A stretch of DNA of 32,689 nt from Octopus bimaculoides (taxonomy: Eukaryota): contig NC_068983.1 of NCBI RefSeq assembly GCF_001194135.2, positions 32,123,219 through 32,155,907 of the forward strand, written 5' to 3'. The notes beneath the pieces were generated by a model. That model made no database searches. It was not told the origin of the DNA and saw only the letters and a program-made list of their open reading frames with translations. The position numbers and the translations under genes were made by a program. Below are positions 4,746-32,388 of this stretch, one piece after another (the stretch's first letter is position 1; every line of letters begins with the position of its first letter).

Positions 4746-4785
<40 letters not shown>

Positions 4786-5190: not shown

Positions 5191-5199
5191 TATTATTCT

Positions 5200-13358: not shown

Positions 13359-13583
13359 TCACGGTAACAGATCATATCCCAGAAGGCAGTCAGCAATGGC
13401 ATCACAAAGGGAAAGTAGCTTGAAAGGTTTATGTTGAGCAAGTTGAAGGGCATGTGGTATTGAGTCTGTGATCCAGAAGTTATCAAAGATATCACTGTCA
13501 ACAAAATTCTTCCAAGAATTTTTAGGAAAAACAGCATGAGTTACATAAGCACTGATAGAAACAGCACCATGTTCAAGCAAAAT
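13359..13583 (-). CDS. PRS4-like: Class II ribose-phosphate pyrophosphokinase, terminal coding exon
   Basis: Acceptor tatattttcag|ATT, phase 0. Reads ILLEHGAVSISAYVTHAVFPKNSWKNFVDSDIFDNFWITDSIPHALQLAQHKPFKLLSLCDAIADCLLGYDLLP* (TGA 13359-61). Matches the plant PRS3/4 C-terminus pattern HGA..VSAYVTH.VFP..SW...FWITDS.P.......PF..LSL...IAD.L. Confidence 0.95.
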   Translation of the reverse strand: MLLEHGAVSISAYVTHAVFPKNSWKNFVDSDIFDNFWITDSIPHALQLAQHKPFKLLSLCDAIADCLLGYDLLP

Positions 13584-13789
13584 CTGAAAATATATAACAA
13601 AAGAAATTGAATAAAACAAAACCAGTAATCTTTTATACTTTATAGAATAAGAGCAACAATTTTTACTTTCATTGCAGTGGTCCTTCAGTTTTTCTGAGCC
13701 CTGTAAAAGAACTTGGAAGGTTGGGCCTCCAACCAGGCCTTATCGCGATACCCTTAAAGCCAGGAACTTTTCAACACCCTCTCGTTGTG

Positions 13790-14090
13790 TGAAGGTAGGA
13801 GTCCATTAATGCATTGTCCTCAGTCCATTCCTATTTATCGTAGTCATACAGGCCATTACTGGGAAACTTAAGACTGACTGTCCATGGGAACTCCTATATG
13901 CTGACAGTCAAATCCTCATAGCTGAATCTATAGTGAAATCAGAGAGGAAATTCTAGGCATAGAAACTAAATATAGAATTGAGAGGTCTTAAGGTGAACCT
14001 AGAAAAGACAAAAATTTTAGTAAGAAGGAAAATGGCATTTTGTGATATGTAGAAAGGGAGTAGGTATAAACTCCTGGACAAAGGTAGAAG
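13790..14090 (+). mobile_element. Degraded RTE LINE RT fragment in the last PRS intron
   Basis: VLSPFLFIVVIQAITGKLKTDCPWELLYAD, then RGLKVNLEKTKILV and ICRKGVGINS, with indels. Confidence 0.75.
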
Positions 14091-14662
14091 TAGGTGCTGA
14101 AATAAAGGCGAGAGTAAGTGAAGGGTGGCATTAGAGGTAGTTCAGAGGGGGTGGGGAGAGAGAGAGAGAGAGAGCTGGACATCAACATAACTTCCATCTC
14201 CAAAATTCCATTCATAAGATATTGATCAACCTTAGATTATGGTGCTTGTGCAATGGTATCAAACCCAGCTCATCACACAACCATGATGCCCTCTGTACAA
14301 GGCTGTCATTATTTAACCCCAGGTCAGTTCTGTGTGAGTAAATCTATGACCAAACCTATGTTCCAGCCTTTATCCTTCCATTTTTCTCGTTTTTTCAGAC
14401 AGTATACATCATTCAAATATCTTTTTTAAGATAGTACAATGATGTTTGCAGACTGAGAGATCATATAGAGGCTCTCTTGTTGGCCCATTAAAAGGTTCAT
14501 AGTTAGCGATAGATCCATATTCAAAAACTATTAACTACACCATTCAGGCCATACAAATTTGCTCAAAACTTTTGACGTAATACCTATCCAAACTTTGTCA
14601 AAACAATTTAGCCCCTGAGACAGATATATTTACAGACATTAGGTTAAAATAATACAACTTAC

Positions 14663-14739
14663 CTTGCCACATTCTTTCAAAGTTCCTCCAGTTAGAACCA
14701 AATCGTCAATTATGATGACAGATTTTCCCTCTGGGTTCC
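14663..14739 (-). CDS. PRS4-like: Class II PRPP synthetase exon containing the PRPP-binding loop
   Basis: ttcccttacag|GG AAC...GGC AAG|gtaagt, 77 nt, phase 1 to 0. Reads (G)NPEGKSVIIIDDLVLTGGTLKECGK, the type I PRTase motif. Confidence 0.95.
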
Positions 14740-14819
14740 CTGTAAGGGAATATAAAATATGAAGCAATAATGTGACAGAAAATTTTTTTATATATGTAGC
14801 TGTGTGCATTTGTTAACAT

Positions 14820-14924
14820 GTGTATGCATGGGTGTGGACATGTGTGTGTAAAAATATATACATATATGTGTATATGTATGTATGTATATACACACACATT
14901 TATACACCATAGCTGTATATACAA

Positions 14925-14977
<53 letters not shown>

Positions 14978-15050
14978 AAGACAGACAGACAGATAGATAG
15001 ACATGTCAAACAGAAATACATGCACACACACACATACACATATGTATATA
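14820..15050. repeat. Compound (CA)n/(TA)n/(GACA)n microsatellite block
   Basis: Direct reading. Confidence 0.85.
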
Positions 15051-15801
15051 TATACAACCTAAACAAGATTACATGTATAAATGGCAATTTGAGAACAAAA
15101 GTGTGCATCATCTCATTTTATATGTGCATATGTGAACATGTGTGTGAATATATTACTATTTTACTGTTTAATCATTTGCATATTGTTCAATCAATTGCTT
15201 TGTACCTTTGGAAGCCCTTCCTAACTGCTAACCATGCCACTGAGCTATGAAACTGGAACAAACTCTGCTTCCTCAGCCAGTCTTACTGAGATAACTGAGC
15301 TGTGCCCCTTACCATGGATAATGCATTATGGCTGTAGGAACACGGTTTTGAACCCATGAACATGAAATAAATAATCTAGCAGTGGAGTTTTGAGTTACAC
15401 TACAGGCCACATGTGACTTCTGTTGAACCTTACCTATGTTGTGCACCATAGCAGAGCATGTGACTCATAGTTTAGATGAAAGATTGTTAATGAAGGCCAA
15501 CACAATGTTATTGAAATAGAAAAAAAAACATTTGGCTTTAATAAAGTATTCACCGTTATTATGATTCCTTTAGGTGGGGTGCGATTTAAGAGTTCTACTC
15601 CAGGTCTACCTCCCTCCAAAGAATTAGTGAATTTGTAAACAATATAACATTTCATTACATACCAAAATCATACCAATCATCTGTATAACATATATTGTTG
15701 TATGTTACTGAATGAGGGATATTACACTAAAGAGATTTTTTTAATGAATTGGAAATCTGTCTGAATAGAATTATTTTACTGAATCCTTAAAGCATTATAG
15801 C

Positions 15802-16029
15802 TTAACCCCTTTGATGTCAACTTACACACAGCCATTTTCAAACTATGATATATATTTCATGTTTTAAAGCTATCTTAATTAAAATAATCTATCAAAATTT
15901 CATATTAACTTATGTTCCAAACACTAGCTTAATAATGACAAAGTAATTTTACTAAATTCTTTGTAATTTCAAAATTAATTGAAATAAAGGCAGTGAATTT
16001 CAGCAGAAATATGGTAATCAAATGGTTAA
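15802..16029. mobile_element. TTAA-flanked MITE (piggyBac-like termini)
   Basis: Left end TTAAcccctttgat and right end atcaaatggTTAA are imperfect inverted repeats with TTAA at both ends, around an AT-rich non-coding interior. Confidence 0.6.
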
Positions 16030-16589
16030 TAAACTACAAAGATTTATTTATGTTGAAATATTGAGTCAAGTTTGAATAACATTGTGAATAAATTTCCCTA
16101 ACATCACAGTAGCCTCCATCATTCTCCTTCACACCAAACACTGCCATCTTGACTAGAAAAACTCTTTCACTGTCAAGTAAGATTTCTTTCAAGACGCAAG
16201 GCCAATTTTGTAAAAGAGAACTACAATCCTACTGATACAGTGTTATCAACTGACCAAGGTGAAACTCTGTTACCACAGTGGCTTTCTTCCTTACTGTCTT
16301 AATTCAGCAAGTAGCATTGTGAAACAAGCTGTCCTGCCATAAAGCAGAGTTCTCTGTCTCTTATAACATGATAACAATTTTTGTGAATATTTCTACTGTA
16401 CAATTATGTTGGTAAAGCTTTAACAAATCTTAATACCTTGTATTCCATCCTTATTTTCATATCAGAGAAAAGTTCATATGGGTAGACTCAAATCCACAGT
16501 TCCAGTGAACAAAGAATAGTAGCTATCCCATTAAGTTGTAGTTTCTAAAAAAAAACTGTATCAGTAATAGAGGTCCTGAAATGACTATC

Positions 16590-16730
16590 TTGCTTCACAA
16601 CCATGTAGTCTTGGGGTTCAGCCCCACTGTGCTGTACCTTGGGCAACTATCATCTACTATGACCTTGAGTGGATTGAAATTTGGAAGACAGAAACAGTCT
16701 AGAAGCTCATTGTGTGTGTGTGTATGCATT
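16590..16730 (+). mobile_element. tRNA-type SINE, partial 5' half
   Basis: B-box-like ggggttcagcccc followed by accttgggcaa...gagtggatt...agacagaaac...agaagc, shared with the copies at 18549, 26801 and 30175. Confidence 0.7.
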
Positions 16731-16964
16731 GTGTGTGCATGTGCATGTGTGTGAGAGTGTTTCATTCCTGTACTTAAAACAATGATGTTGTTGATATTCC
16801 TTAACATAGTGGTTTGACATATATACATTGATAAAATAAGTACCAAACTTAATAATTACTGAGGCTGGTTGATATATTCAACTAAACCCTTGAAGGTAGT
16901 ATCTCACCATGGCTGCAATCCAATAGTCAGTAAAAAACTAAATAAATAAAAGGATACACACACA

Positions 16965-16967
<3 letters not shown>

Positions 16968-17062
<95 letters not shown>

Positions 17063-17085
17063 CACACACACATACATATACATAT
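16968..17085. repeat. (TA)n(TG)n microsatellite
   Basis: Direct reading. Confidence 0.95.
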
Positions 17086-18548
17086 CACACTTAATTTAAA
17101 CTAATTATGTTATTATATTTGCAACAATTATCTCATGATATTTACTGATATTTACAAATATCCTTAACATGACTGCATCTTTAGTTACACATCCATTCTC
17201 AGTCTTCACATGTGTACACACACACACATACACATACAGAGAAAATCTCTGCATTTTTTTATTTCTTATAATGAAATAACACTTTCAATGAGTTTTAATA
17301 TACACTTTGTTGTTTTATATACTAAGACATATTTCAAAAAACACCTCAAACAAATGCAAAGAGAACAGAGGGATGAAAAAAGGTAATAACTACAAGACAC
17401 AGTGATGTCACAAACTTTGCTGCTCATATTCTTCTTCCCCCCCCCCCCCNNNNNNNNNNNNNNNNNACTTCATGTTTAAATCTTTCGACTTTCTGCTCTT
17501 TCTCTTGCCACGTTTACTTTTACTCCTACTCAGTTTCTCACTTTTTAGGATCTTATCTTACTTCCTCTATCTCTTCATTGATCCCTCTATTTCCAGCCTT
17601 CTTTTCTTTGCCTCACTCTCCTTCTCTCTGTATCTTTCCCTTTCACCCTTATCAATGCCAACATAACTACCAACAACTCCACTGCCATATCTAACAGCTG
17701 TTTATTTCATTTTCTATTTGAGTTACTTTCCTTAGCATTACACAAAACACAAAAATAGGTATGTAGGAATGTACTGTTACAATAATATATAGAGAACAAT
17801 GATACAGTGTTTTTTTTAAACGGAAATTGTTTCCAGAAGTAATAATGTTTCTGTCAGGATCCTTCTTTGAAGAGTTGAGAAAAAAAGTGGAACACTGAAA
17901 ATGAAGTTGAAGAGGGTAAAAAGAAAAAGTGAGTGCCAGAATATTAAGCAAATTTATCTCAGTGAAGAAAAAAGGTGGTAGTTAGAATAAAAAGTTAAAG
18001 TTAAAAGAATGTATATTGTTTGATGTATAATGATTCACACTTATGTATGTACATATATTTACACAATCAAGAGAGGAAGGTGTAGGTGTGATGCAAATTG
18101 AAACAGATTCAGTCATTGTATTTTTTACAGTTCGCTTGAAGTCAGGGATCCAACCACAGTGACCTCTTTTGGCGAGCATTCTAGAAACTTCCAAGAATAG
18201 CAAATTTATGCAGAATATGCACAAAATATACATGAAAAGGTAAAAATAACAGCAAAATTCTGAGACACAGAATGTCTGACATGCAAACGTGATAACAACC
18301 GTCCATGAAACTGGAAATTACAGGATGCAAAAATCAAAGTGTTTGAGATGTAATGTTGGCTGCTGAGACATGAGCAGTGGAAAAAGTGTTGTTAGTCTGC
18401 AAGAACTCTAGGTTGCTTGCAGAGGCTGAAATTGCTTTCCTGCTGGAGCAATGAGAAAGCAAATAAAATCATAGAATGTGGTGCATGTGTGTATGAATGT
18501 TGAAACAAGTTAACATAATATACACAATATTCAAAAATATGTACATAT

Positions 18549-19789
18549 AGGCACAGGAGTGGCTGTGTGGTAAGTAGCTTGCTTACGAACCACATGGTTC
18601 CGGGTTTATTCCCACTGTGTGGCACCTTGGGCAAGTGTCTTCTACTATAGCCTTGGGCCGACCAAAGCCATGTGAGTGGATTTGGTAGACAGAAACTGAA
18701 AGAAGCATGTCGTATATATCATCATCATCATCATCATCATCGTTTAACGTCCGCTTTCCATGCTAGCATGGGTTGGACAATTTGACTGAGGACTGGTGAA
18801 ACCGGATGGCAACACCAGGCTCCAATCTAAATTGGCAGAGTTTCTACAGCTGGATGCCCTTCCTAACGCCAACCACTCAGAGAGTGTAGTGGGTGCTNNN
18901 NNNNNNNNNNNNNNNNNNNNNNNNNNNNNNNNNNNNNNNNNNNNNNNNNNNNNNNNNNNNNNNNNNNNNNNNNNNNNNNNNNNNNNNNNNNNNNNNNNNN
19001 NNNNNNNNNNNNNNNNNNNNNNNNNNNNNNNNNNNNNNNNNNNNNNNNNNNNNNNNNNNNNNNNNNNNNNNNNNNNNNNNNNNNNNNNNNNNNNNNNNNN
19101 NNNNNNNNNNNNNNNNNNNNNNNNNNNNNNNNNNNNNNNNNNNNNNNNNNNNNNNNNNNNNNNNNNNNNNNNNNNNNNNNNNNNNNNNNNNNNNNNNNNN
19201 NNNNNNNNNNNNNNNNNNNNNNNNNNNNNNNNNNNNNNNNNNNNNNNNNNNNNNNNNNNNNNNNNNNNNNNNNNNNNNNNNNNNNNNNNNNNNNNNNNNN
19301 NNNNNNNNNNNNNNNNNNNNNNNNNNNNNNNNNNNNNNNNNNNNNNNNNNNNNNNNNNNNNNNNNNNNNNNNNNNNNNNNNNNNNNNNNNNNNNNNNNNN
19401 NNNNNNNNNNNNNNNNNNNNNNNNNNNNNNNNNNNNNNNNNNNNNNNNNNNNNNNNNNNNNNNNNNNNNNNNNNNNNNNNNNNNNNNNNNNNNNNNNNNN
19501 NNNNNNNNNNNNNNNNNNNNNNNNNNNNNNNNNNNNNNNNNNNNNNNNNNNNNNNNNNNNNNNNNNNNNNNNNNNNNNNNNNNNNNNNNNNNNNNNNNNN
19601 NNNNNNNNNNNNNNNNNNNNNNNNNNNNNNNNNNNNNNNNNNNNNNNNNNNNNNNNNNNNNNNNNNNNNNNNNNNNNNNNNNNNNNNNNNNNNNNNNNNN
19701 NNNNNNNNNNNNNNNNNNNNNNNNNNNNNNNNNNNNNNNNNNNNNNNNNNNNNNNNNNNNNNNNNNNNNNNNNNNNNNNNNNNNNNNNN

Positions 19790-19841
<52 letters not shown>

Positions 19842-20055
19842 ATATGTTTGTGTGTCTGTGTTTGTCCCCCCAACATCCCTTGACAACCGATGGTGGTGTG
19901 TTTACGTCCCCGTAACTTAGCGGTTCGGCAAAAGTGACCGATAGAATAAGTACTAGGCTTACAAAGAATAAGTCCTGGGGTCGATTTGCTCGACTAAAGG
20001 CGGTGCTCCAGCATGGCCGCAGTCAAATGACTGAAACAAGTAAAAGAGTAGAGAG
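18549..20055 (+). mobile_element. tRNA-derived SINE (5' half 18549-18718, 3' half 19790-20055) interrupted by a nested LINE-tail repeat and an N gap
   Basis: A-box-like gtggctgtgtggtaag and B-box-like gggtttattcc. The 3' half (gacaaccgatggtggtgtgtttacgtccccgtaacttagcgg...ccagcatggccgcagtcaaatgactgaaacaagtaaaag) matches 30390-30580. Confidence 0.8.
18719..18897 (-). mobile_element. LINE-tail repeat, reverse orientation, nested in the SINE
   Basis: (atc)n gtttaacgtccgctttccatgctagcatggg...ggatgcccttcctaacgccaaccactc; same family as 8780 and 32389. Confidence 0.8.
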
Positions 20056-22023
20056 TATACATAGGTAAGGTCCTGCAAAAGAAAGTGACATGCAAAGAAA
20101 AGTGAAAAAAAACAGACAACAGAAATGCAATACAATGCGCAAGCAAGGAAAAGTTCCAGTCTCTAAAGTAGAGTTCAATGTAAATGGTTTTGGACAGTTT
20201 TTTGCAGCCAATGCACAGTTCTCCCACTGTGTGTGACATAGTGATCAAACTTTCTCACATAAACATGAACTGCTTACTTCCTTTTACTTAACAAATTGTA
20301 CACTTTAAATAGACTTTTCTTAGGTTTGTTTTGCCTTCTTGGTTACATGCTTTTGTATTTTTCACATGCATAGTTTACATGCTTTAACCTTTTTCCTGTC
20401 TTGCATTGTTCCATGTTTGCACACATTCTTTTATATGCCTTGTTGCTACCTATGCCTTAGCTTACTTTTCTGTTTCTCACCTACAGTTCATTCTTTGTTA
20501 TTGACTGTTCTGGTTCTGCCAAGGGAGTGCTGTAGGTGTGACGTAAATTGAAACAGCTTCTGTCATTGTATTATTTACGGTTCACCAGAAGTCAGGGATA
20601 AAATTACAGTGACCTCTCTTGGTGAACGTTCTAGAAACTTCCAAGAATAGCAGATTTATGTCCCTTTTAGTAATACCACTGAGTCATAGAATGTTCTGGA
20701 AGGTCTTTGTTCACCAAGGGGAACCAACAGTCTTTGAGGCTATATATTGGATGGTTGCAGTTCTTTGCCCTCTCTATTTCACTGAATTTCAACCTGAGCA
20801 CATCTGTGTTAGAGAGCAGCTAATCTTGACTACACGTCGCCTAGACAAAAGAAAATGACTTTTTGGAGCAACATTACGCGTCAAGCCTTTCATGTTACAC
20901 AACATGTGTACAGATTTCTCTTACACTACAAGTGAACCCAATTGTAGTATGAAATTCTTTCATACATCTTTCTATTCCATATTTCCATGCAGAATGCAAC
21001 AAGACTAAATTGTATGTAACTTTTCACATTCATGTATAGCTTCATATGAAGCTTACGTACTTGCTCTTAATTATGTTAAATTATTTGTGAAGTTTAAGAA
21101 TGGCTCTTTCATTATTCCAAACCTTGTAACTGTGTTAACAATTAGTAACAGTGGCAGCAAAACACTATAATTAGTGGTAAAAGAAACCCAGCGACATGAG
21201 AAGAGATGGTGGAGATCGAGGCAGTTGAGATTAGGGAACTGGGATTTTTGAATAGCAGTGTGTGTACAAAGAAAGAAAATAACAAAAACACTTGTATATG
21301 TGTACAACAGAACAAATACAAGAATAAAGGACAGTGCCAATGGTTTTAAAATAGAGAAAAAAGGGTTGTAGTTCATAGGAAAAGAACTAAGAGAAAACAT
21401 TTTTATGTATTGTCATACCCATACAAGTCTTTTAAGGCCATTTTCCATTCCTTGACAAAGGTTAGCCTTGTGAATACCATGACAATTTTCTCCATTTTGC
21501 CCTATTTTCTATATTCCATTCAGCAACTCCCTTGCTTTCATTTCCTCCTCCATCACCTTTAAGCATGTATTTCACAGTATCTCCCCACTGCTATTCTGTT
21601 CCACATTCATTTTGTTGATTTTTGCCACCCAGTCATTTCAATCCTTTCTCAGCTGATGACTCGGCCATCCCATCCCATTTCTCTTCACAACATTCACTGC
21701 CACTTCTGATCTCACCATGCTCTGCAATTTATTATTAATCATCCTCTTTTTCTCCAAGATACTCCACCCAACCACTGAAACATTTTCATTTTCATTCTTT
21801 CCAGCTTTCTATTGCTACTCCACATTTATTACGTGTGTTTCATTTCCTTAAGTCAGAACACGTCTCACGCATTCAGTATACATTTTTCTCTCAGTTTTAG
21901 CATCACTCCTCTCGTTAGCACACTATTAAATTCCTGAAACTTCTTCAATGTACATCTGATAGTAGTCATCATCACTCAGTCTGAGCAACCTTTTCCATTT
22001 AATGCTTCCTAGGTGACAAAATA

Positions 22024-22890
22024 CAAAGTGGTATCAAAAAGTTACTGGACTAGTTCTGTAGTGCACCAACAGATGGCAGCACATGGTTGCATGTGCAGTG
22101 ACCTTCATGAGGCAGTATGCCAAGTGATATCGTTGTGTTTACTTAACAAGTTGTGAAATTTGTGTTTTTGTGATCATGCTGTAGTCTGCAATTTTGTCAT
22201 AGACAAGAACAAAGAGCCAATGTGAAATTTTGTGTTAAACTTGAGAATTCTGCTACAGAGACATGAAGACTGCTTTGGCAAGCTTATGACGATGAGGCAA
22301 TGGGTTGTACACAATGTTTTGTGTGGCACAGGTACTTCAGAAGAGGAAGGATATCCCTGAAAGATGATGAGCAATCTGGAAGATGTACCACAAGTGTCAC
22401 CCCCCAGAAAAGTGGTATTGTGCATTGAGAATTCATCCCCCAAGGCCAGACCATCAATCAAAAGTTCTACTGCAATGTTTTGAAATGTCTGAGGGAGGAC
22501 ATTCAATGAAAGCAACCAGATCTGTGGAGCATGAAGAATTGGATTCTTCACAATGACAATGCATCTTGTCACTGAGCTCTCCTCACTTGTGAGTTTTTGA
22601 CCAAAAACACATGGTATTGCTTCTGCACCCACCTTATTCACTAAATTTAGCACCTGTGGACTTCCATCTCAAAAGTCATTGTTTTAACATTGTTGCCAAA
22701 ATCCAGAGTGAATTGCAGAAGGTCCTTGCCTCCTTCATGGAAAACAACTGCCAGGTCAGATTCCAAAAGTGGCAAGGATGCTGGGAGTGGCAAGGTGACT
22801 ATTTTGAAGGAGATGATGTTAAAACTTAGGTAGATATGTTATTTTTTTCATTAAACATAACTAATCCTGGAACTCTTTGATACCACCTCA
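22024..22890 (+). mobile_element. Internally deleted mariner with both TIRs and TA target duplication
   Basis: ta|caaagtggtatcaaaaagttactggact and agtt...ggaactctttgataccacctca|ta are inverted. Remnants include FIPQGQTINQKFYCNVLKCL, WILHNDNAS, LLHPPYSLNLAPVDF and GDYFEG. The first-D (ITGDETW) region is missing. Confidence 0.9.
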
Positions 22891-23134
22891 TATATTTACA
22901 TCTTGAATCTACATTCTACTTTCAAGATTCCAACAATTCCTCCTTCTTTAGCTCCCTCCATACACACTTTCACTTAAATGTAGCTGCCAAATTAGTTAAC
23001 CTCTCAAACCACTACATTTTTCATAAGCCCACCCAGAACATTTTGTATGTTTAAGGAAGTTCACTCTAGTATCCTTTCCATACACAGCCATTTCCTTGTT
23101 CTTTCTTCTTATCTGTGTACATTAAAGGACCTAC

Positions 23135-23319
23135 CATCTTTAATTTGAACAATTCTTTTTGAACCATTTCGTATCTTGTTGCAGATTATGGTGTCTGCAT
23201 TGGGAAAATAGCGTTGAAAGCGTTTGCAGGCACCATCATCTGGGAAAGCTACTGTGTAGTTATTACACCCAAACATATTCTCCAATTCAAGTTTCATCAA
23301 AGGAATGGCAGACTCCAGT
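23135..23319 (-). CDS. PRS4-like: Class II PRPP synthetase exon
   Basis: tttcttcacag|A CTG...GAT G|gtaggt, 185 nt, phase 2 to 1. Reads LESAIPLMKLELENMFGCNNYTVAFPDDGACKRFQRYFPNADTIICNKIRNGSKRIVQIKD; compare plant VAFPDDGAWKRF...VCTKVREGDKRIV. Confidence 0.95.
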
Positions 23320-23504
23320 CTGTGAAGAAAGAAACAAAACAAAATAGTTGAGTTTTAAATTTAGAATGAATGTATGTATATTTTGTGAATGTTCTAATGT
23401 AACTGAAAATTCCAACTTTACACACTGCTCTCAATACAGCAGACCACATGATCCCAGATTCAATTCCACAGTACAGGAATGAAGTAATATGAAAAAGTAC
23501 CCTA

Positions 23505-23705
23505 TGGCAACAAGCTGAGAGTAGTTAGCATGCTAGTCGAAATGCTTAGCATCATTTCATCTGACTTTATGTTCTGAGGTCAACTTTATTTCTATCCTTT
23601 AGGGGTCAATAAAGTAAGTACCAGTTGATCACTAGGGTCAATGTAATTGACTTGTGCTCTCCCCTGAAATTGCCAGCCTTGTGCCAAAATGTGAAACCAA
23701 TATGC
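23505..23705 (+). mobile_element. Second SINE family, partial
   Basis: gaaatgcttagc...aaagtaagtaccagttgatcactagggtcaatgtaattgact resembles the aataagtac...ggggtcgatt core of the other SINE copies. Confidence 0.5.
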
Positions 23706-23952
23706 AAAAAGTGCCTTCTTCCAAAGCTTTTGGATGCACACTAATTCAATGAGAAGGTAGTTCAGCTGATCAAACAATTAAATTCACAGCATTGAAACCA
23801 ATGGAGAATGATCCATATATGTACAGAAGAGGAAGTACTTATATGGGTGACCGCTTGGGAAACCTAGGTGCTATAAGCATTCCCTTTTCATGGTGTTGCT
23901 CCAGCATGACCGCAGCCACTTGGCTGAAACGCATAAATAAATCAATAAATAA

Positions 23953-23990
<38 letters not shown>

Positions 23991-25279
23991 TCGCTACATA
24001 GATGACTGTATAGGAGCCACCTCCCTCTCCCGCGAACAGCTCTGCCTTTTCATCTCCTTCCTCTCTAACTTCCACCCTGCTCTTGACTTTACTTCTACCA
24101 TCTCTGACACCTCTGTTAACTTCCTCGACATCTCTCTTTCCGTCAACCCCGCCTCCAACTCTCTAACTACCTCCGCCTTCTTCAAACCNNNNNNNNNNNN
24201 NNNNNNNNNNNNNNNNNNNNNNNNNNNNNNNNNNNNNNNNNNNNNNNNNNNNNNNNNNNNNNNNNNNNNNNNNNNNNNNNNNNNNNNNNNNNNNNNNNNN
24301 NNNNNNNNNNNNNNNNNNNNNNNNNNNNNNNNNNNNNNNNNNNNNNNNNNNNNNNNNNNNNNNNNNNNNNNNNNNNNNNNNNNNNNNNNNNNNNNNNNNN
24401 NNNNNNNNNNNNNNNNNNNNNNNNNNNNNNNNNNNNNNNNNNNNNNNNNNNNNNNNNNNNNNNNNNNNNNNNNNNNNNNNNNNNNNNNNNNNNNNNNNNN
24501 NNNNNNNNNNNNNNNNNNNNNNNNNNNNNNNNNNNNNNNNNNNNNNNNNNNNNNNNNNNNNNNNNNNNNNNNNNNNNNNNNNNNNNNNNNNNNNNNNNNN
24601 NNNNNNNNNNNNNNNNNNNNNNNNNNNNNNNNNNNNNNNNNNNNNNNNNNNNNNNNNNNNNNNNNNNNNNNNNNNNNNNNNNNNNNNNNNNNNNNNNNNN
24701 NNNNNNNNNNNNNNNNNNNNNNNNNNNNNNNNNNNNNNNNNNNNNNNNNNNNNNNNNNNNNNNNNNNNNNNNNNNNNNNNNNNNNNNNNNNNNNNNNNNN
24801 NNNNNNNNNNNNNNNNACAGTTTCACCTTCACCTCCTCCAACCTTATTTACTGCATCAAATGCACCCTATGCAACCAACTCTACGTGGGGCAGACGGGCC
24901 GCCGGCTGGCCGACCGTTTCACCGAACACCTAAGGGACGTTCGGCTAGGTTCGGACTCCCCCGTCGCCCGTCACTTCCACTTGGCCAACCACTCTCCCTC
25001 TAACATCTCCGTTTTTGGCCTCGCCCTGCACCATGGGTCCACTCCCTCGCGACTCCACTTGGAGCAACGCTACATTTTTAACCTTAATTCTTCTTTCCCC
25101 TTCGGACTCAACGCAGCCCCCTCCTCCTTATGACTCTCCCCTTTACGTCTATGCAACACTTTTCTTTATTTATTTATTTTTATTTTTTTTAACCCCCCCT
25201 CGTCCCCTTTACATTATATCCATTATTCTCTTGTTATTACACTCACTACATTTTTCCACTTTTTATCTCACCCCTACCT

Positions 25280-26460
25280 ACATGCACACATACCCACACA
25301 AAAAATACACGCACCCATACACACACATGTAAGCACACCTACCCCCAACACACCACACACACACAACACATATGCATGCACTCACACGCTCAGACTCGCC
25401 CACACACTTATACAAACGCACATACACACGCACACTTGCACATACACACACACGCTAACAATCACACAAACATACACACACACACACACCCAAGCACACA
25501 TAGCCCACATATACCCCCATTCACAAATACCTCCCACACACCTGACAACCCATACATACCCCCATTCACACATACCTCACATACACCTACACACACACCT
25601 CCCACACACCTTACATATATACCGCCCACATACATGACAAACATACATGCGTGCCCTCACACACACATATAGACGAATGCACATATATACACACACATAC
25701 ACACCTCTCACATACACAAAACCACACACACACACACACAACACACATACACACATGCACACATACACATATACACACATGCACACATACACATATACAC
25801 ACATGCACACACACCTCTCACATACACAATACTCACTCACATACATAACACACACGCNNNNNNNNNNCACATGCACACATACACATATACACACATGCAC
25901 ACACACCTCTCACATACACAATACTCACTCACATACATAACACACACGCACGCACGAAAACACAATATACACATACACGCACAAAAAATATACACACACA
26001 CACGCAAACACACATACAGACACACATAAACACACACACACGCACATCCACACACCCACATACACACACACTTCTCACCAACACTACACGCTCACGCATA
26101 CAATCACACACACATGGGCATAAACAACACATGCACACGCACATACACAGCAACGCACATACACACAAACACACGCACAAAAACATACACATACACACAC
26201 GCGCACATACAAAATACACACACACATGCACACGTACCCAACACCTACAACCCCACACAAACACGAACACACACATACTCAAAAAACCGCCTGTTGACTT
26301 TCTACCTACACTGTCTATAAGCGTCCACCAACCATTCCTGCTACTAATTTCTTCCACTATGTCANNNNNNNNNNNNNNNNNNNNNNNNNNNNNNACACAC
26401 ACACACACACACATACATACGCACGCACACATTCTGTTATCACACACACACTCGCAGACT
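25280..26460. repeat. About 1.1 kb cryptic CA-rich low-complexity tract with local 24-nt tandem units
   Basis: Direct reading; acacatgcacacatacacatatac repeats near 25751-25800. Source of many spurious HT/CV ORFs. Confidence 0.9.
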
Positions 26461-26621
26461 CTCGCGCACGCAGATATTCATCTCCCTTTTTCACTCTCCT
26501 GTCTTAGAAAGAACTTTTCCCCCACCACCTCCTCTTCTGGTTTTTTCACAATGTAACCTCGTTGGCATCGGTACCATTTTCCTCTTTCTCCGTTCTTCCA
26601 TTCTCCAAACTTTCCATCTTT

Positions 26622-26649
26622 CCGATGAAGGGCTACGCCCAAAACGTCA
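26622..26649 (+). ncRNA. Degenerate minimal hammerhead-ribozyme motif in the Penelope 3' region
   Basis: CCGATGA-a-GGGC tac GCCC-AAAAC-GTC-a versus canonical CUGANGA-stem II-GAAAC-GUC. Two core mismatches and weak stem I pairing. Confidence 0.5.
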
Positions 26650-26800
26650 TACACTCTCTCTTTCCTTTCCTGAGCGTCCAATAACACTATCCGTATCATG
26701 TCCTCACTTTGTTGTTTTTTTGTTATTGTTTTTTTGAACCTATATATATATATACACACACACTCATACATACATACATGTGTGTGTACACGCATAAAAT

Positions 26801-26970
26801 AGGCACAGGTATTGGTGTGTAGGTAAGAAATTCATCTCCCAATCACATGGGTTTAAGTTCAGTCTCAATGCATGACACCTTGGACATGTGTCTTTTACTA
26901 TAATCCAAGACTGCCCAAAGTCTTGTGAATAGACTTGGTAAATAGAAACTGAAAGAAGCCCATCCTATAT
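26801..26970 (+). mobile_element. tRNA-type SINE 5' half, diverged
   Basis: aggcacagg...cacatgggtttaagttcagtc...gacaccttgg...gaaactgaaagaagccc, the same family as 18549. Confidence 0.7.
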
Positions 26971-27354
26971 ATCATATGTATATCATATGCGTATGTATGT
27001 ATGTATGTATGTATGCATGCATGCATGCATGTATGTATGTGTTACTGTTTTCTGGCATTGAAATCATGTAATAGTTGTAAATGAAAGTCATCAAGCAAGC
27101 GATGTTTTTATGTTCTTCATTCTCATTCTTCCATAAAAACATATCTGGTAATGGGGAATATTACCTAATATGGAAACAAATGAGAGTTGGCAACAGAAAG
27201 GGAATCTGGCTATAGAAAATCTGCTTCAACAAAACTTACATGAGCATGGAAAGCGGACATTAAAGCAATGATGATATGTGTATGTGTGTGTGTGTGTGTG
27301 TGTACATATACATGTGAGTGGTTGTATTTCCAAGTCAGTGCCTAATAGTCGGAA

Positions 27355-27386
27355 ATGAGCATCATCATCATCACCACCACCACCAA

Positions 27387-27418
<32 letters not shown>

Positions 27419-27425
27419 TCATCAT
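27355..27425. repeat. (CAT)n/(CAC)n microsatellite
   Basis: Direct reading; it produces the spurious poly-His, poly-Asp and poly-Ile ORFs. Confidence 0.9.
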
Positions 27426-27757
27426 ACAAGTGGTGTCCATTTCCAATATTTCATGGAAAGATGTCTGGTCATGGGGAAATATTACCTTCTTTGGAAACAG
27501 GCAATGGTTGGCAACAAGTAGGCTATACAGTTATAAAAAAAAAACTGTCTGTTAAAACAAAATGTATATGTGTGTGTGTGTGTATTCACATTGTTCTATA
27601 ATTTTAGACAATAAAGGTTGCTCATATCCTTTATTTTCCAACGTTGTTTTCACTTTAAACCATCTTATTACTATATCAGATCTACACCTGAAAGTAGGTA
27701 CTAATAATTATTTGTTCTTTAAATAATAATTTTTTTTTTTTAAATCATCAGTTTTAC

Positions 27758-27876
27758 CTTGGAATGACTGTGTCAGAAAAGTAAAAGCGTTCCTGAAGGG
27801 CATGGATGTCAAATATTGTTATCTGTGCTGGTCCTTTTGTAGTAAATGGAATATGAGACATTAGGCTGGCCAAAGT
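27758..27876 (-). CDS. PRS4-like: Class II PRPP synthetase exon
   Basis: ctatttacaacag|ACT...CCA AG|gtaaaa, 119 nt, phase 0 to 2. Reads TLASLMSHIPFTTKGPAQITIFDIHALQERFYFSDTVIP(R); DIHALQERFYF is class II-diagnostic. Confidence 0.95.
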
Positions 27877-28046
27877 CTGTTGTAAATAGAAAAACAATTA
27901 TAAATTCTCAGATAAGGATTAATATTTAAAGTATAACACACATCTCTTCTGTTTTTATTTATAAATATAGAAAATGTGAGAGATACAAGATTATTGGTTT
28001 AATACAACAAGCTAAATATATTTCTGTCTTTCATCTTATTAAACTA

Positions 28047-29388
28047 CTAGCTGAATTACCTGGCATTGCCCGGTTTGTGCTGTTCTTATTCAGATTAGTA
28101 AACAATAAATATGAAGATATATATTTTTTTATAATAATTATTTCAAAACATATATATTTTATTTTAAAAATATCCAAATTGTAATGATAATAGAATTTCG
28201 AACTGAAAATCTGTCGATCTCAGGGTAAACAATATTCATTGTGTAATTTTAGTTGGTGTCCAAATGAATAAATTGTTGCTGTTTCCAAGTCGACAAGCAA
28301 GCAACATACAGTTGACTGCAGGAGAAACATGTAGTACAGAGATCAAGTCCAACTACCTTGATGGATTGACTCTGAGATTTGTTAATTGAAATACCAAAAC
28401 TTAGTTTGACTGGAAACTGAAACCTCTTAAAATCAAATGGAACATCTGTGGGTATGAGAGGAAATTTTGGAATAAAGACATTTTCTTCTTTGTGATTACC
28501 TGTTATGATTGTTGCCTGTAGGATATAGGGCTTCATGGAAGTAACAATGAAGTGAGTTCCATTACACAGGCAAAGTGGGTCAAGATTCCTAAGCAACATA
28601 ATGGGGGCATCCAGCTTTAGTGTCAAGTTATGCTGTGGCATCCCAATAGGTTTAAGTGTTTTCAGAAATTCAACAGGGTATTTAACAGCCTAATCTTGAT
28701 AAACTGTTGTGTGAATTGATAGAAAAATCATTTCTGATGTATCCGTTAACTTTTGAAGAAGTTCATGATTGAGTTTATCAACTATTTCATTAGCTGGAGC
28801 CAGTATAGCTCTTTGATATAGCCAGTTTACATCAGTGTAATTGACAATCACACATACACTGATACAGACATACACTAACACAGACATTTACTAAGACAGA
28901 CACACACAGACATATATTTATGTAATGAATGTGCAAACATACACACACTCATATACAAAATGTGTCATTGTCATGGTGGTAGAAAATGTCCTTTACTATC
29001 ACATACATAACGATCATGCAAACACACACACACTGACAGACACATACTCATATACAAAATGTGTCATTGTGGTCGTGGTATAAAATGTCCTTTACTATGT
29101 TGTATATAATGAATGCGCAAACACACTGACAGACACATACACACTCATATACAAAATCTGACGTTGTGGTGATGGTATAAAATGTCCTGTACTATAGTTG
29201 ACTATAGAAAGATTATTTTCAAGAAAATATTATATTGTTTTAATCCAAATGAAAATAAAAATTACATGTTGATACTCGTGGGGTGTAATAGTATTACCTT
29301 GTAGAATTTTGTTTGATTTGGTTGAGCTGTTTGAGAATGCATAGGGAACAGACAGACAGAGAGACAAAGAATTTTATATAGAGAGAGA
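28047..29388 (-). mobile_element. Internally deleted Helitron with both termini, a PIF1-helicase remnant and a minisatellite
   Basis: The 5' end is a|TCTCTCTCTATATAAAATTC (29388) and the 3' end is hairpin ccgggcaatgccagg then taattcagCTAG|t (28047). Helicase remnants: NWLYQRAILAPANEIVDKLN (28690-28887), and MPQHNLTLKLDAPIMLLRNLDP..LCNGT...FKRFQFPVKLSFGISINKSQSQS...QLYVAC (28249-28641). Confidence 0.92.
28914..29200. repeat. About 97-bp minisatellite, roughly 3 copies, inside the Helitron 5' region
   Basis: actcatatacaaaat...gtataaaatgtcctttactat recurs at about 28948, 29047 and 29144. Confidence 0.85.
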
Positions 29389-29627
29389 TTATCTCTTACT
29401 AAGCCAACTTCTCTACGATTGCACACTTTGCTAGAAAGAGTAGTCAAATCTGTTTCAAAATACATTCTATCACCTTAGAAAATGGGCAACGCATTGAACA
29501 ATGTAGCCCAAGTAATATAAAAAGGATGGTATTGTTATATCTGGAATGCATTTAATCATTCACTCTTCAATTATTATCATTTCAAAAAAATGATGCTCAT
29601 TATAACTAAAAAAAAATAAGTATTTAC

Positions 29628-29721
29628 TTTTGCTGTAGGTATTTCACCCTCATTCTCAACTCGTTCCATTGTTCCAGTAGGAAAATATGGCAACAGAAAA
29701 TGGAATGACCTTGCACGATAT
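29628..29721 (-). CDS. PRS4-like: Class II PRPP synthetase exon
   Basis: ttttcttttgtag|A TAT...GCA AAA|gtaaat, 94 nt, phase 2 to 0. Reads YRARSFHFLLPYFPTGTMERVENEGEIPTAK; compare plant [21 protein letters not shown]. Confidence 0.95.
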
Positions 29722-29829
29722 CTACAAAAGAAAATACAGAGAATCTAATCATCAAGAGAGGGTTTTAATTAGTAGGGGAATCAGAAAAGAAATCTTGATA
29801 TCTATAAAATATAAAGACAGTTAAATGAG

Positions 29830-30158
29830 AAAAAATAACTCAAAGTCTGTAGATGCTGTTAATTATTGCAGCAAGACAAATCACAAATCCCTTCAAGTAG
29901 ATGGCCCTGCTTGATCTGTAGAAAAGGCATAGGTAGAAACTACATAAGATGCACCCGAGTAAGCTTAGGACACATAAGAAGTACAGCAATATCAGAGGAA
30001 GGTTAACAGGGAAAACAGCTTTTGTCTGTGGAAGATGCACAGGTACAATAAAAGCTGAAAATGTACAGAAAGTAACCTGCGTCAACTGTCAAGGGGGTAA
30101 GCTGGAGGTAGTATATAGCTTCCATTATCTAGGTAACCAAGCTAGTAGCGGAGGTGGC
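29830..30158 (+). mobile_element. RTE LINE fragment (PHD-like cluster to YLG..SSGGG)
   Basis: RWPCLICRKGIGRNY...NIRGRLTGKTAFVCGRCTGTIKAENVQKVTCVNCQGGKLEVVYSFHYLGNQASSGGG. Confidence 0.85.
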
Positions 30159-30174
30159 ATATATTTATGAAATA

Positions 30175-30321
30175 AAGAAGCTTGCTTCCCAACCACATGG
30201 TTCTGTGTTCAGTCCTGCTGCATGACAACTTGGGCAAGTTTCTTCTACTATATCCTTGGGCCAACCAAAGCTTTGTGAGTGGATTTGGTAGATGGAATCG
30301 GAAAGAAGCCCATCGCATGTA

Positions 30322-30365
<44 letters not shown>

Positions 30366-30581
30366 TGTTTGTGTATGTGTGTGTTTGTACCTCCACCACT
30401 GCTTGACAACTAGTGTTGGTGTGTTTGTGTCCCTGTAACTTAGTGGTTTGACAAAAGAGACTGACAGAATAAGTACCAGCCTTAAAAAAGAAGTACTGGA
30501 GTCAATTCATTCATTCGACTAAACATTTAAGGTAATGCCCCAGCATGGTCGCAGTCTAATGACTGAAACAAGTAAAAGATA
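30175..30581 (+). mobile_element. Near-complete tRNA-type SINE with central (TG)n
   Basis: Colinear with both halves of the 18549-20055 copy; ends gactgaaacaagtaaaagat plus an A-rich tail. Confidence 0.85.
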
Positions 30582-30789
30582 AAAAAAACAAAACAAATTT
30601 AAGAACAACAACAAAAAAATCTAACACTAAACAGCTATTCCAATTGCAGAACAGGCATGAAACTTGATTTTTCAATTGTTTTCTGAACTGGCATCATTGA
30701 ATCATTGACTGGTGGGTGTTAAGTTCTCAATCAACCAAGTTTGTAATTTCAGAGTTGTACTTGTCTAGCAAGTGACTTGATTTAAGACC

Positions 30790-31074
30790 ACGTGTTAAAT
30801 TTATTTCATGCCAGTGAGGCACTTGTGCAGGTGATACATAAATGGCACCCATGCCAGTAACATGTAAAAGGAACCTGTGCTGGTGACACGCAAGAGGTAC
30901 CCGTGCTGGTGACATATAATAAAAGATACCCACTACACTCTATGGAGTCATTGGCATTAAGAAGGGCATCCAGTCATAGAAACCGAGCCAAAATCAGATT
31001 GGATCCTGATACAGCTTTTGGGTTTACCAGCTCCAGTCAAACTGTCTAACTCATGCTGGCATGGAAAACTGATG

Positions 31075-31076
<2 letters not shown>
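30790..31076 (+). mobile_element. LINE-tail repeat, forward orientation
   Basis: cccactacactc...ttggcattaagaagggcatccag...atcagattgga...catgctggcatggaaaactgatgatg. Confidence 0.75.
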
Positions 31077-31108
<32 letters not shown>

Positions 31109-31499
31109 ATGTGTGTGTGTGTGTGTGTGTGTGTGCATGTGTGTGAAAGGTTTTTGTTGCCCAACTGCAACCTGGTCACTGACAGAGTTGCAGTAGAGCT
31201 GTATCAGTGACTAGGCTGTAGTTGTGTGGCCAAATATGCTAACTTCCCTTAAAATTAATTTAAATTTAAAGATAAATTTAACAGTGCTGTGCATTATTAA
31301 ATGGCTAGACTGACTCTTCCACACTGTAGCTGCTTACTTAAGTTTGCAACAAAGGTTCAGTTCCTGGTTGAATTATTTTGCTTTACTTACTATTTCTCCT
31401 GGCAAATCCAGCCACAACACATGGTGATAATTCAACAACCCATTAAAGGTCACAAAAAATATTTTTATTGGTTAATTAGCAAACTATATTGATGCTTAC

Positions 31500-31572
31500 C
31501 TTGGAAACATATAAAGAACGGAAAGTTGTTCAAATATGATCTCAGGAGAGTGGAAACTGCCAAGGAAAATGA
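31500..31572 (-). CDS. PRS4-like: Class II PRPP synthetase exon, the most 5' one in the window (N-terminal exons lie beyond 32689)
   Basis: ttttcttatttcag|TC ATT...CCA AG|gtaagc, 73 nt, phase 1 to 2. Reads (V)IFLGSFHSPEIIFEQLSVLYMFP(R); compare plant [25 protein letters not shown]. Confidence 0.93.
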
Positions 31573-32313: not shown

Positions 32314-32363
<50 letters not shown>

Positions 32364-32388
32364 TATATATATACATATATATACATAC

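What the first reader, a model, noticed from the sequence alone, without database searches (positions are those of the whole stretch)
13359..31572. Plant-type (class II) PRPP synthetase encoded as a spliced gene in an animal, probably cephalopod, genome
Seen: six exons (73+94+119+185+77+225 = 773 nt) with GT-AG introns and matching phases. They give one open frame with FPTGTMER, DIHALQERFYF, AFPDDGA.KRF, IIIDDLVLTGGT, YVTHAVFP and FWITDS. Established: these follow Arabidopsis/spinach PRS3/PRS4 (class II: phosphate-independent, accepts several NTP donors, lacks class I allosteric ADP inhibition) rather than animal PRPS1/2 (DLHASQIQGFF, VSPDAGG, DDMADTCGT). Inference: the animal may have a second, unregulated route to PRPP for nucleotide/NAD synthesis, either ancestral and lost in vertebrates and insects or an old lateral acquisition. 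TE-filled spliceosomal introns argue against contamination. From memory, PRS4-like automatic annotations exist in some invertebrates, so the gene family is probably not new, but I know of no characterisation of its biochemistry in animals.
Basis: partly seen in the sequence, partly recalled or inferred. Interest (0 to 1): 0.75.

Follow-up and report, generated by a model that had tools for sequence, protein, structure and literature searches.

The report
Octopus class II PRPP synthetase gene
The window holds the last six exons of a real octopus gene for the "plant-type" (class II) enzyme that makes PRPP, the sugar-phosphate donor for nucleotide synthesis, but both this gene and its presence across invertebrate animals are already annotated and published.

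Summary
Six minus-strand exons (73+94+119+185+77+225 nt) have AG/GT borders and give one 256-aa frame. That peptide is 100% identical to residues 126-381 of Octopus bimaculoides XP_014781861.1 (LOC106877469).

All five N gaps lie inside introns 3 and 4. A transcript contig from a related octopus joins all six exons at the predicted borders, so no coding exon is hidden in a gap.

The class II call is correct at sequence level:
- 52-53% identity to biochemically characterised spinach PRS4, against 21-24% to human PRPS1 and E. coli Prs.
- A class II regulatory-loop motif (TGTMER), with Thr in place of class I Arg96.
- No class I C-terminal allosteric/filament motif.
- All catalytic residues kept, and dN/dS 0.12.

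"Plant-type" is a misnomer, and lateral transfer into animals is not supported. All six intron positions and phases are shared with a brachiopod and a sea anemone.

None of this is new. The protein was already named "ribose-phosphate pyrophosphokinase 4-like". Karki et al. (Nat Commun 2025) report class II PRPS across most metazoans except craniates. A 2026 preprint lists the Octopus sinensis orthologue as class II subclass 1 and shows the amphioxus enzyme is active.

Still untested in any animal enzyme: phosphate independence, NTP donor range and ADP/GDP insensitivity.

The parts
31500..31572 (-). First coding exon in the window (73 nt). Encodes (V)IFLGSFHSPEIIFEQLSVLYMFP(R), residues 125-149 of XP_014781861.1. 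Enters in phase 1 and leaves in phase 2.
29628..29721 (-). Exon of 94 nt. Encodes the regulatory flexible loop with the class II motif FPTGTMERVENEGE.
27758..27876 (-). Exon of 119 nt. Encodes the NTP/diphosphate-binding motif DIHALQERFYF; the equivalents of human D128 and H130 are kept.
23135..23319 (-). Exon of 185 nt. Encodes AFPDDGA (equivalent of metal-site D171) and the catalytic flexible loop NKIRNGSKR (equivalents of K194 and R196).
14663..14739 (-). Exon of 77 nt. Encodes the ribose-5-phosphate binding loop IIIDDLVLTGGT.
13359..13583 (-). Last coding exon (222 nt plus the TGA stop). Encodes YVTHAVFP, FWITDS and the short class II C-terminus ...LLGYDLLP, which lacks the class I GESVS-LF motif.
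12854..13358 (-). Probable 3' UTR. It is colinear with the 3' end of transcript contig L007 at about 80% identity. An AATAAA lies at 13040-13035.
23320..27757 (-). Intron 3 (4.4 kb). Holds three assembly gaps and a 1-kb CA-rich simple-repeat block (25.3-26.3 kb).
14740..23134 (-). Intron 4 (8.4 kb). Holds two assembly gaps and SINE-like dispersed repeats (18572-18719, 18799-18895).
28249..28641 (-). Pif1-type helicase fragment (PF21530, E = 1e-11) inside intron 2. Probably a remnant of a Helitron-like element.
31573..32689 (-). 3' end of the upstream intron. The previous exon lies beyond the window, past a 4.5-kb gap in the assembly.

Best explanation
The window carries the 3' two-thirds (six of the coding exons, residues 125-381) of the single-copy Octopus bimaculoides gene LOC106877469. 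This gene is the octopus orthologue of the metazoan class II (subclass 1) ribose-phosphate diphosphokinase, also called PRPP synthetase.

The protein most likely works as a conventional PRPP synthetase, transferring the beta,gamma-diphosphoryl group of a Mg-NTP to C1 of ribose 5-phosphate. The residues it would use are the conserved His of DIHALQ, the metal-site Asp of FPDDGA, the Lys/Arg of the catalytic flexible loop, and the DDLVxTGGT ribose-5-phosphate loop.

Three features set it apart from class I: Thr replaces the adenine-contacting Arg96, the basic regulatory-loop residues are replaced by acidic ones, and the C-terminal allosteric/filament motif is missing. By analogy with spinach PRS3/PRS4, it is therefore expected to be phosphate-independent, tolerant of several NTP donors and free of allosteric ADP/GDP inhibition. 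By analogy with the amphioxus enzyme, it is expected to form its own dimer-to-hexamer assemblies separate from class I PRPS.

Shown here: gene structure, orthology, class-specific residues, purifying selection, and a spliced transcript in a congener. Inferred: catalytic activity and the regulatory properties.
For: Gene structure and identity:
- Six AG/GT-bounded exons give one frame.
- 100% identity to XP_014781861.1, once named 'ribose-phosphate pyrophosphokinase 4-like'.

Family and class:
- Pfam PF00156 and PF14572 score above their cut-offs, and TIGR01251 hits at E = 6e-29.
- 52-53% identity to KPRS4_SPIOL and other plant PRS4 proteins, against 21-24% to human PRPS1 (my sequence verified identical to PDB 8dbc) and E. 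coli Prs.
- In an NJ tree the octopus sits with the molluscs (72% bootstrap) inside a class II clade, separated from class I by a long branch.
- Residue mapping: D128, H130, D171, K194, R196, D220, D221 and T228 are kept. R96 becomes T, Q135 becomes R, D143/N144 become I/P, and residues 308-313 are absent.
- The octopus agrees at all 51 residue columns that are invariant in the other 28 class II sequences.

Descent, expression and selection:
- All six intron positions and phases are identical in Lingula and Actinia.
- Transcript contigs L007 and L008 from other cephalopods bridge the junctions.
- dN/dS = 0.12 against L007.

Literature:
- Class II is found across most metazoans but not Craniata, and splice junctions are conserved among holozoans (PMC12238573).
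- Octopus sinensis XP_029634381.1, in the same 90% cluster as this protein, is listed as class II subclass 1.
- The amphioxus class II enzyme is active.
Against: - No enzyme assay exists for any molluscan class II protein.
- Phosphate independence, NTP range and ADP/GDP insensitivity have been measured only for plant enzymes (PMC3380012).
- The octopod ribose-5-phosphate loop has Leu (DDLVLTGGT) where most class II proteins have Gln, Met or Lys. The consequence is unknown.
- The FLAG-region criterion (no Glu39 equivalent; Phe109 instead) lies in an exon outside the window and rests on the NCBI gene model.
- The transcript evidence comes from related species, not from O. bimaculoides itself.
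- The TIGR01251 score (101) is below its cut-off (113), which is expected for a partial and divergent class.
Confidence: 0.93

Rival explanations
1. It is a catalytically dead pseudoenzyme that regulates or scaffolds other PRPS subunits, as PRPSAP1/2 do for class I.
For: The 2026 preprint reports more than 30 independent pseudoenzyme origins in eukaryotic PRPS, including within class II. The octopod ribose-5-phosphate loop has an unusual Leu at the position of class I Asp224.
Against: Every site the preprint uses to call pseudoenzymes is intact: the regulatory loop, H130, D171, the catalytic loop K/R and the ribose-5-phosphate loop DD...T..T. That position is already variable (Q/M/K) among class II proteins, including the active amphioxus enzyme (M). 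No cephalopod name matched in the preprint's supplementary files outside the class II species table, so none is in its pseudoenzyme sheet. The amphioxus class II protein does not associate with class I subunits.
Confidence: 0.04
2. It is a class I PRPS/PRPSAP or a class IV PRPS that was mislabelled because of a few motif resemblances.
For: The Pfam and NCBIfam models hit are generic to all PRPS classes. The regulatory-loop motifs of class IV (STMER) and class II (TTMER) are similar.
Against: Identity to class I is only 21-24%, against 52-84% to class II members including spinach PRS4 and amphioxus. The FLAG-region Glu retained by class IV is Phe here. The preprint files the O. sinensis orthologue under class II subclass 1. 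No class IV sequence was available here for a direct comparison.
Confidence: 0.02
3. It is contamination or a recent lateral transfer from a plant, alga or bacterium into the octopus assembly.
For: Close homologues exist in plants and in at least one bacterium: Desulfonema ishimotonii, 59% identity (61% over the window-encoded part), in a truly bacterial gene neighbourhood.
Against: The gene has spliceosomal introns of 1.8-8.4 kb carrying octopus-type repeats and transposon fragments. It lies on a 168-Mb chromosome record. Orthologues of about 95% identity occur in O. sinensis and O. vulgaris. Its six intron positions are shared with Lingula and Actinia and none is identical with spinach PRS4. 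It groups with the molluscs in the tree.
Confidence: 0.01

Closest known systems
Metazoan class II (subclass 1) PRPS, e.g. Branchiostoma lanceolatum CAH1247366.1 and Octopus sinensis XP_029634381.1 (Karki et al. 2025, PMC12238573; Karki, Meller & Cunningham 2026, PMC13252144)
   Same: Same orthologous group. The O. sinensis protein falls in the same 90%-identity cluster. Identity to amphioxus is 60%. The intron positions match those of other animals, and the GTMER regulatory loop, the lack of a FLAG Glu and the short C-terminus are all shared.
   Different: Nothing of substance. Octopus species (though not Argonauta) carry a Ser/Thr/Gln-rich insertion of about 55 residues near the N-terminus; it is outside the window and is skipped in some O. 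sinensis isoforms. The octopods (Octopus and Argonauta) have Leu in the ribose-5-phosphate loop where others have Gln, Met or Lys.
Plant class II PRPP synthases: spinach PRS3/PRS4 and Arabidopsis PRS3/PRS4 (Krath & Hove-Jensen 1999-2001)
   Same: 52-53% identity. They share DIHALQERFYF, AFPDDGAxKRF, DDLVxxGGT, YVTHxVFP and FWITDS, show the same replacement of the class I regulatory residues, and end at the same short C-terminus.
   Different: Plants have GSFER where animals have GTMER in the regulatory loop. No intron position is identical (one lies a single codon away). The biochemical hallmarks (phosphate independence, broad NTP use, no allosteric ADP inhibition) were measured only for the plant enzymes.
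Class I PRPS (human PRPS1/2, E. coli and B. subtilis Prs) and PRPSAP1/2
   Same: Same two-domain phosphoribosyltransferase-type architecture by profile matches, same reaction, and conserved catalytic His, Asp, Lys/Arg and ribose-5-phosphate loop.
   Different: Only 21-24% identity. Arg96, the basic regulatory-loop residues, Gln135, Asp143/Asn144 and the C-terminal GESVS-LF allosteric/filament motif are replaced or absent. The amphioxus class II protein does not co-assemble with class I subunits.
Bacterial class II-like Prs (Desulfonema ishimotonii, P0104)
   Same: 59% identity (61% over the window-encoded part), with the same GTMER loop and signature motifs. It is intronless and sits in a bacterial gene neighbourhood.
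   Different: It is prokaryotic and lacks the animal N-terminal insert and the ...LLGYDLL tail. In the NJ tree it groups with plant PRS4 (98% bootstrap), not with animals.

Membership tests
Class II PRPP synthase (PRS3/PRS4 type) | Sequence groups with biochemically characterised class II enzymes (spinach PRS4) and apart from class I | tested here: met
   52-53% identity to KPRS4_SPIOL and other plant PRS4 proteins, against 21-24% to human PRPS1 and E. coli Prs. The NJ tree shows a class II clade on a long branch.
Class II PRPP synthase (PRS3/PRS4 type) | Regulatory flexible loop remodelled: the class I Arg96 equivalent replaced by Thr/Ser in a T-x-[TS]-[MF]-E-R motif ('TTMER' in PMC13252144) | tested here: met
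   The octopus has T164-G-T166-M-E-R169. T166 aligns with human R96, and the basic KKDKSR stretch aligns with the acidic RVENEG (definition).
Class II PRPP synthase (PRS3/PRS4 type) | FLAG-region glutamate (human E39) absent | tested here: met
   Phe109 of XP_014781861.1 aligns with E39. This column holds F, W or Y in all 29 class II sequences. The residue is encoded outside the window.
Class II PRPP synthase (PRS3/PRS4 type) | Class I C-terminal allosteric/filament-interface motif (human 305-313, NGESVSYLF) absent | tested here: met
   The protein ends ...LLGYDLLP with no equivalent of S308, S310 or F313.
Class II PRPP synthase (PRS3/PRS4 type) | Catalytic residues of PRPP synthetase retained | tested here: met
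   Equivalents of D128, H130, D171, K194, R196, D220, D221 and T228 are all present. The octopus agrees at 51 of 51 residue columns invariant in the other class II sequences.
Class II PRPP synthase (PRS3/PRS4 type) | Activity independent of inorganic phosphate | not testable with these tools
   This is a biochemical property (definition in PMC3380012). The papers read report it for no animal enzyme.
Class II PRPP synthase (PRS3/PRS4 type) | Broad diphosphoryl-donor specificity (ATP, dATP, GTP, CTP, UTP) | not testable with these tools
   Only inferred from the loss of the adenine N1 and N6 contacts.
Class II PRPP synthase (PRS3/PRS4 type) | No allosteric inhibition by ADP/GDP | not testable with these tools
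   Only inferred from the replaced or absent allosteric-site residues.
Class I PRPS / PRPSAP | Arg96, FLAG Glu39, basic regulatory loop, Gln135, Asp143/Asn144 and the C-terminal GESVS-LF motif | tested here: not met
   All are replaced or absent. Identity is 21-24%.
Class IV PRPS (PMC13252144) | STMER regulatory loop together with a retained FLAG-region glutamate | tested here: not met
   The FLAG position is Phe. The O. sinensis orthologue is listed under class II, and class IV is described as largely mutually exclusive with class II. No class IV sequence was available for direct alignment.
Phosphoribosyltransferase-type PRPP synthetase superfamily (Pfam PF00156 / PF14572; TIGR01251) | Profile matches above the curated cut-offs | tested here: met
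   PF00156 scores 36.3 bits (cut-off 26.3) and PF14572 scores 31.6 bits (cut-off 27). TIGR01251 scores 101 bits, below its cut-off of 113, for this partial peptide.

The most novel reading that the evidence does not exclude
The most novel reading still open is about physiology, not about the gene. The octopus (and invertebrate) class II enzyme could truly be a phosphate-independent, NTP-promiscuous PRPP source that is not feedback-inhibited and runs beside regulated class I PRPS. The cephalopod-specific features might tune it in a lineage-specific way. These are the Leu in the ribose-5-phosphate loop and an alternatively spliced Ser/Thr/Gln-rich N-terminal insert of about 55 residues. None of these properties has been measured for an animal enzyme.
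Probability: 0.5. Interest if true: 0.3.

Novelty: already known. Interest (0 to 1): 0.15.

Why it matters
The gene is a sound example of a metabolic enzyme class that vertebrates lost and most invertebrates kept. That bears on how PRPP supply, and hence nucleotide and NAD synthesis, is regulated outside vertebrates.

The distribution, the LECA-age origin, the conserved splice sites and the basic activity of an animal class II enzyme are already published. This very gene is already annotated. The window therefore adds an independently verified gene model and a clean intron-position comparison, not a discovery.

The remaining open point is biochemical: phosphate dependence, donor range and nucleotide inhibition of an animal class II enzyme.

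Tried and rejected
- Primary definitions: I tried to read the Hove-Jensen 2017 review (PMC5312242) and the Krath & Hove-Jensen papers (PMC2374067, PMC32126). None is held. The class definitions were taken from PMC3380012 and the two Karki papers instead.
- A search of the Nat Commun 2025 supplements for Octopus/Mollusca found nothing. The 2026 preprint's table did list cephalopods.
- My first splice mapper required an ATG start and failed on Lingula, whose gene call starts inside the protein model. The version anchored on tblastn hits worked. A multi-record file error also cost one call.
- A Pfam call with a wrong frame failed.
- Rfam scan of the window at the gathering threshold found no RNA family.
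- dN/dS against the more distant cephalopod transcript L008 could not be computed because synonymous sites are saturated.
- Not done: a direct search for an octopus class I PRPS. A human PRPS1 query would probably list only vertebrate clusters in its top 120, and the question is peripheral.
- Not done: structure prediction. No class II structure is solved, and the sequence evidence was already decisive.
- Rejected readings: contamination or recent lateral transfer, class I/PRPSAP, class IV and pseudoenzyme (see the rival explanations).

Full report
**1. Observation**

All six quoted motifs lie on the minus strand, each inside a short open stretch. Reading the flanks gives six exons:

| Exon (minus strand) | Length |
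|---|---|
| 31572-31500 | 73 nt |
| 29721-29628 | 94 nt |
| 27876-27758 | 119 nt |
| 23319-23135 | 185 nt |
| 14739-14663 | 77 nt |
| 13583-13359 | 225 nt, with TGA |

Every acceptor is a polypyrimidine tract followed by AG, and every donor is GTA(A/G). Joined, the 773 nt give one frame of 256 codons plus a stop.

**2. Gaps**

The window has nine N runs. The five inside the finding all lie within introns:
- Intron 3 (27757-23320): 24189-24816, 25858-25867 and 26365-26394.
- Intron 4 (23134-14740): 17450-17466 and 18898-19789.

None is closer than about 870 nt to an exon. The window is base-for-base the same as GCA_001194135.2 chromosome CM046603.1, with the same gaps, so the newer assembly does not close them. 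Coding continuity was therefore tested in other ways:
- A 1597-nt Logan contig from run SRR3401912 (L007) carries an uninterrupted ORF 94-98% identical to the five internal exons. It aligns to the window in six blocks that end at the predicted exon borders, so it is a spliced transcript of a closely related octopus joining exons 3-4 and 4-5 directly.
- A second transcript contig from a more distant cephalopod (L008) shows the same pattern for five of the six exons.
- In a 31-sequence alignment, no residues are missing at either junction.
- Lingula has the same exon sizes, 73/94/119/185/77.

No coding exon is hidden in a gap. The intron lengths remain uncertain.

**3. Identity**

The peptide is 100% identical over all 256 residues to XP_014781861.1, a 381-aa protein of Octopus bimaculoides. 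It is currently titled 'uncharacterized protein LOC106877469' and was earlier titled 'PREDICTED: ribose-phosphate pyrophosphokinase 4-like'. tblastn of that model puts residues 124-381 on exactly these exons.

The first 124 codons lie beyond the end of the window. In the chromosome record the gene spans 54 kb. Orthologues of the same length and more than 90% identity exist in O. sinensis and O. vulgaris.

dN/dS against the L007 transcript is 0.12 (dS 0.19, dN 0.023), so the gene is under purifying selection.

**4. What it is**

Profile and structure-database matches:
- Pfam matches the phosphoribosyltransferase and PRPP-synthetase-associated domains above their cut-offs. NCBIfam TIGR01251 (ribose-phosphate diphosphokinase) hits at E = 6e-29.
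- The best solved structures are bacterial and human class I PRPP synthetases, but only at E = 1e-17 to 1e-12.
- In contrast, hundreds of proteins are 55-84% identical. They come from molluscs, annelids, nemerteans, a brachiopod, a bryozoan, a priapulid, echinoderms, hemichordates, amphioxus, tunicates, cnidarians and sponges. Many are named 'ribose-phosphate pyrophosphokinase 4-like'.

To test the class call I collected reference sequences:
- Plant PRS4 proteins, found with a probe sequence; these include Swiss-Prot KPRS4_SPIOL, the spinach isozyme 4 used to define class II.
- E. coli Prs, taken from the annotated K-12 genome.
- Human PRPS1; my remembered sequence proved identical to PDB 8dbc chain A.

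Over the window-encoded 256 residues, the octopus is 52-53% identical to plant PRS4, 60% to amphioxus, 73% to abalone, 24% to E. coli Prs and 21% to human PRPS1. In a bootstrapped NJ tree all PRS4-like sequences form one clade on a long branch from class I, and the octopus sits with Argonauta and two other mollusc sequences, one of them abalone (72%).

Residue mapping (class I numbering is human PRPS1):

| Site in class I | State in the octopus protein |
|---|---|
| D128, H130 (catalytic) | kept |
| D171 (metal site) | kept |
| K194, R196 (catalytic loop) | kept |
| D220, D221, T225, T228 (ribose-5-phosphate loop) | kept |
| R96 (adenine contact) | Thr, in TGTMER |
| Basic regulatory loop | acidic (VENEGE) |
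| Q135 | Arg |
| D143, N144 | Ile, Pro |
| 305-313 allosteric/filament motif | absent |
| FLAG Glu39 | Phe109 (encoded outside the window) |

These are the features that PMC13252144 uses to separate class II from class I and from its new class IV. The octopus agrees with all 51 residue columns that are invariant in the other 28 class II sequences.

**5. Origin**

I mapped exons in Lingula anatina (L002), Actinia tenebrosa (L003) and spinach PRS4 (L004) by exact protein-to-genome threading.
- All six introns that bound or separate the window's exons are at the same alignment column and the same phase (1, 2, 0, 2, 1, 0) in octopus, brachiopod and sea anemone.
- None is identical in spinach. One spinach intron lies a single codon from the last octopus intron.
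- The Desulfonema ishimotonii homologue (59% identity; 61% over the window-encoded part) is intronless and lies among typical bacterial genes: a TonB receptor, a sigma-54 activator and threonyl-tRNA synthetase.

Taken with the tree, this means vertical inheritance in animals at least since the cnidarian-bilaterian ancestor. The family is not plant-specific.

The introns hold a Pif1-type helicase fragment, dispersed SINE-like repeats that recur elsewhere in the window and many microsatellites. Contamination is excluded.

**6. What is already known**

- Karki et al. (Nat Commun 2025, PMC12238573) report that class II PRPS occurs 'across most metazoans, excluding Craniata'. [quoted passage not shown] They also report that its loss in vertebrates coincides with the expansion of class I paralogues.
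- Karki, Meller & Cunningham (bioRxiv 2026, PMC13252144) list Octopus sinensis XP_029634381.1, Argonauta hians and Acanthosepion pharaonis as class II subclass 1. The O. sinensis protein is in the same 90% cluster as the window's protein.
- The same preprint shows that recombinant Branchiostoma lanceolatum class II protein makes PRPP, forms dimers to hexamers, and does not co-assemble with human class I subunits.
- The defining class II properties are phosphate independence, broad NTP use and no allosteric purine-nucleotide inhibition (PMC3380012). I found no measurement of them for an animal enzyme.

**7. Verdict**

'Plant-type' and 'possible lateral acquisition' are not supported. The finding is already known, both as an annotation and in the literature.

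What remains open is ordinary enzymology of an animal class II PRPP synthetase. Whether the octopus also carries class I PRPS was not tested here. The literature describes class I as nearly universal in eukaryotes and lists a molluscan example.

Noticed in passing
window 4632-4759 / 4796-4923; 4990-5136 / 6386-6532; 25776-25857 / 25868-25949: Pairs of 98-100% identical segments lie beside N gaps. Two pairs directly flank the 10-N gaps at 4786-4795 and 25858-25867. In the third pair, one copy starts right after the gap at 5824-6385. They look like assembly artefacts (duplicated gap edges), not biological repeats.
   Followed up: partly
window 5139-5823 and 10890-11574; also 6632-6836 / 11962-12166 and 6912-7009 / 12247-12344: Two copies of the same retroelement-like sequence lie about 5.7 kb apart downstream of the gene, in the same order and at 84-98% identity. 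One copy carries a reverse-transcriptase fragment (6636-6986, PF00078, E = 3.5e-5, below the cut-off). This is either a local duplication or two insertions of one LINE family.
   Followed up: partly
window 1908-2378 (-): Mariner-type transposase fragment (PF01359, E = 4e-15) about 11 kb downstream of the gene.
   Followed up: partly
window 28249-28641 (-), in intron 2: Pif1 helicase 2B-domain fragment (PF21530, E = 1e-11) on the same strand as the gene. Probably a decayed Helitron-like element.
   Followed up: partly
window 8782-8963, 18799-18895, 32395-32576 (direct); 8503-8590 (inverted): A dispersed repeat of about 100-180 nt at 80-92% identity occurs at least four times, twice inside introns of the gene. 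It is SINE-like. A second family occurs at 18572-18719, 26825-26972 and 30175-30322 in three different introns.
   Followed up: no
window 25300-26300: A 1-kb degenerate (CA)n / CACACACACATA block explains the extreme GC skew (-0.65) at 24-27 kb. It also generates long spurious His/Thr-rich and Cys/Val-rich ORFs.
   Followed up: yes
L005 6001-6906 (Desulfonema ishimotonii) and the tree: A deltaproteobacterial class II-like Prs groups with plant PRS4 at 98% bootstrap in the NJ tree, not with other eukaryotes. This could reflect the class II subclass structure, the bacterial source of the class, or gene transfer. It was not resolved with this small tree.
   Followed up: partly
XP_014781861.1 residues ~37-95 (outside the window; L006 between 10163 and 34038): Octopus proteins carry a Ser/Thr/Gln-rich insertion of about 55 residues near the N-terminus that is absent from other animals. 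O. sinensis isoforms X2-X4 skip or truncate it, which suggests alternative splicing or alternative starts.
   Followed up: no
L004 (spinach PRS4) vs the window exon 14663 / 13583 junction: The last octopus intron (phase 0, after ...ECGK) and a spinach PRS4 intron (phase 0, after ...ECQ) lie one codon apart. This could be intron sliding of an ancient shared intron, or coincidence.
   Followed up: no
P0068 (Branchiostoma lanceolatum): The amphioxus protein reads DIHSLPLRFYF where every other class II sequence printed in the alignment reads DIH[AT]LQERFYF. The class II enzyme shown to be active in PMC13252144 is from this species.
   Followed up: no
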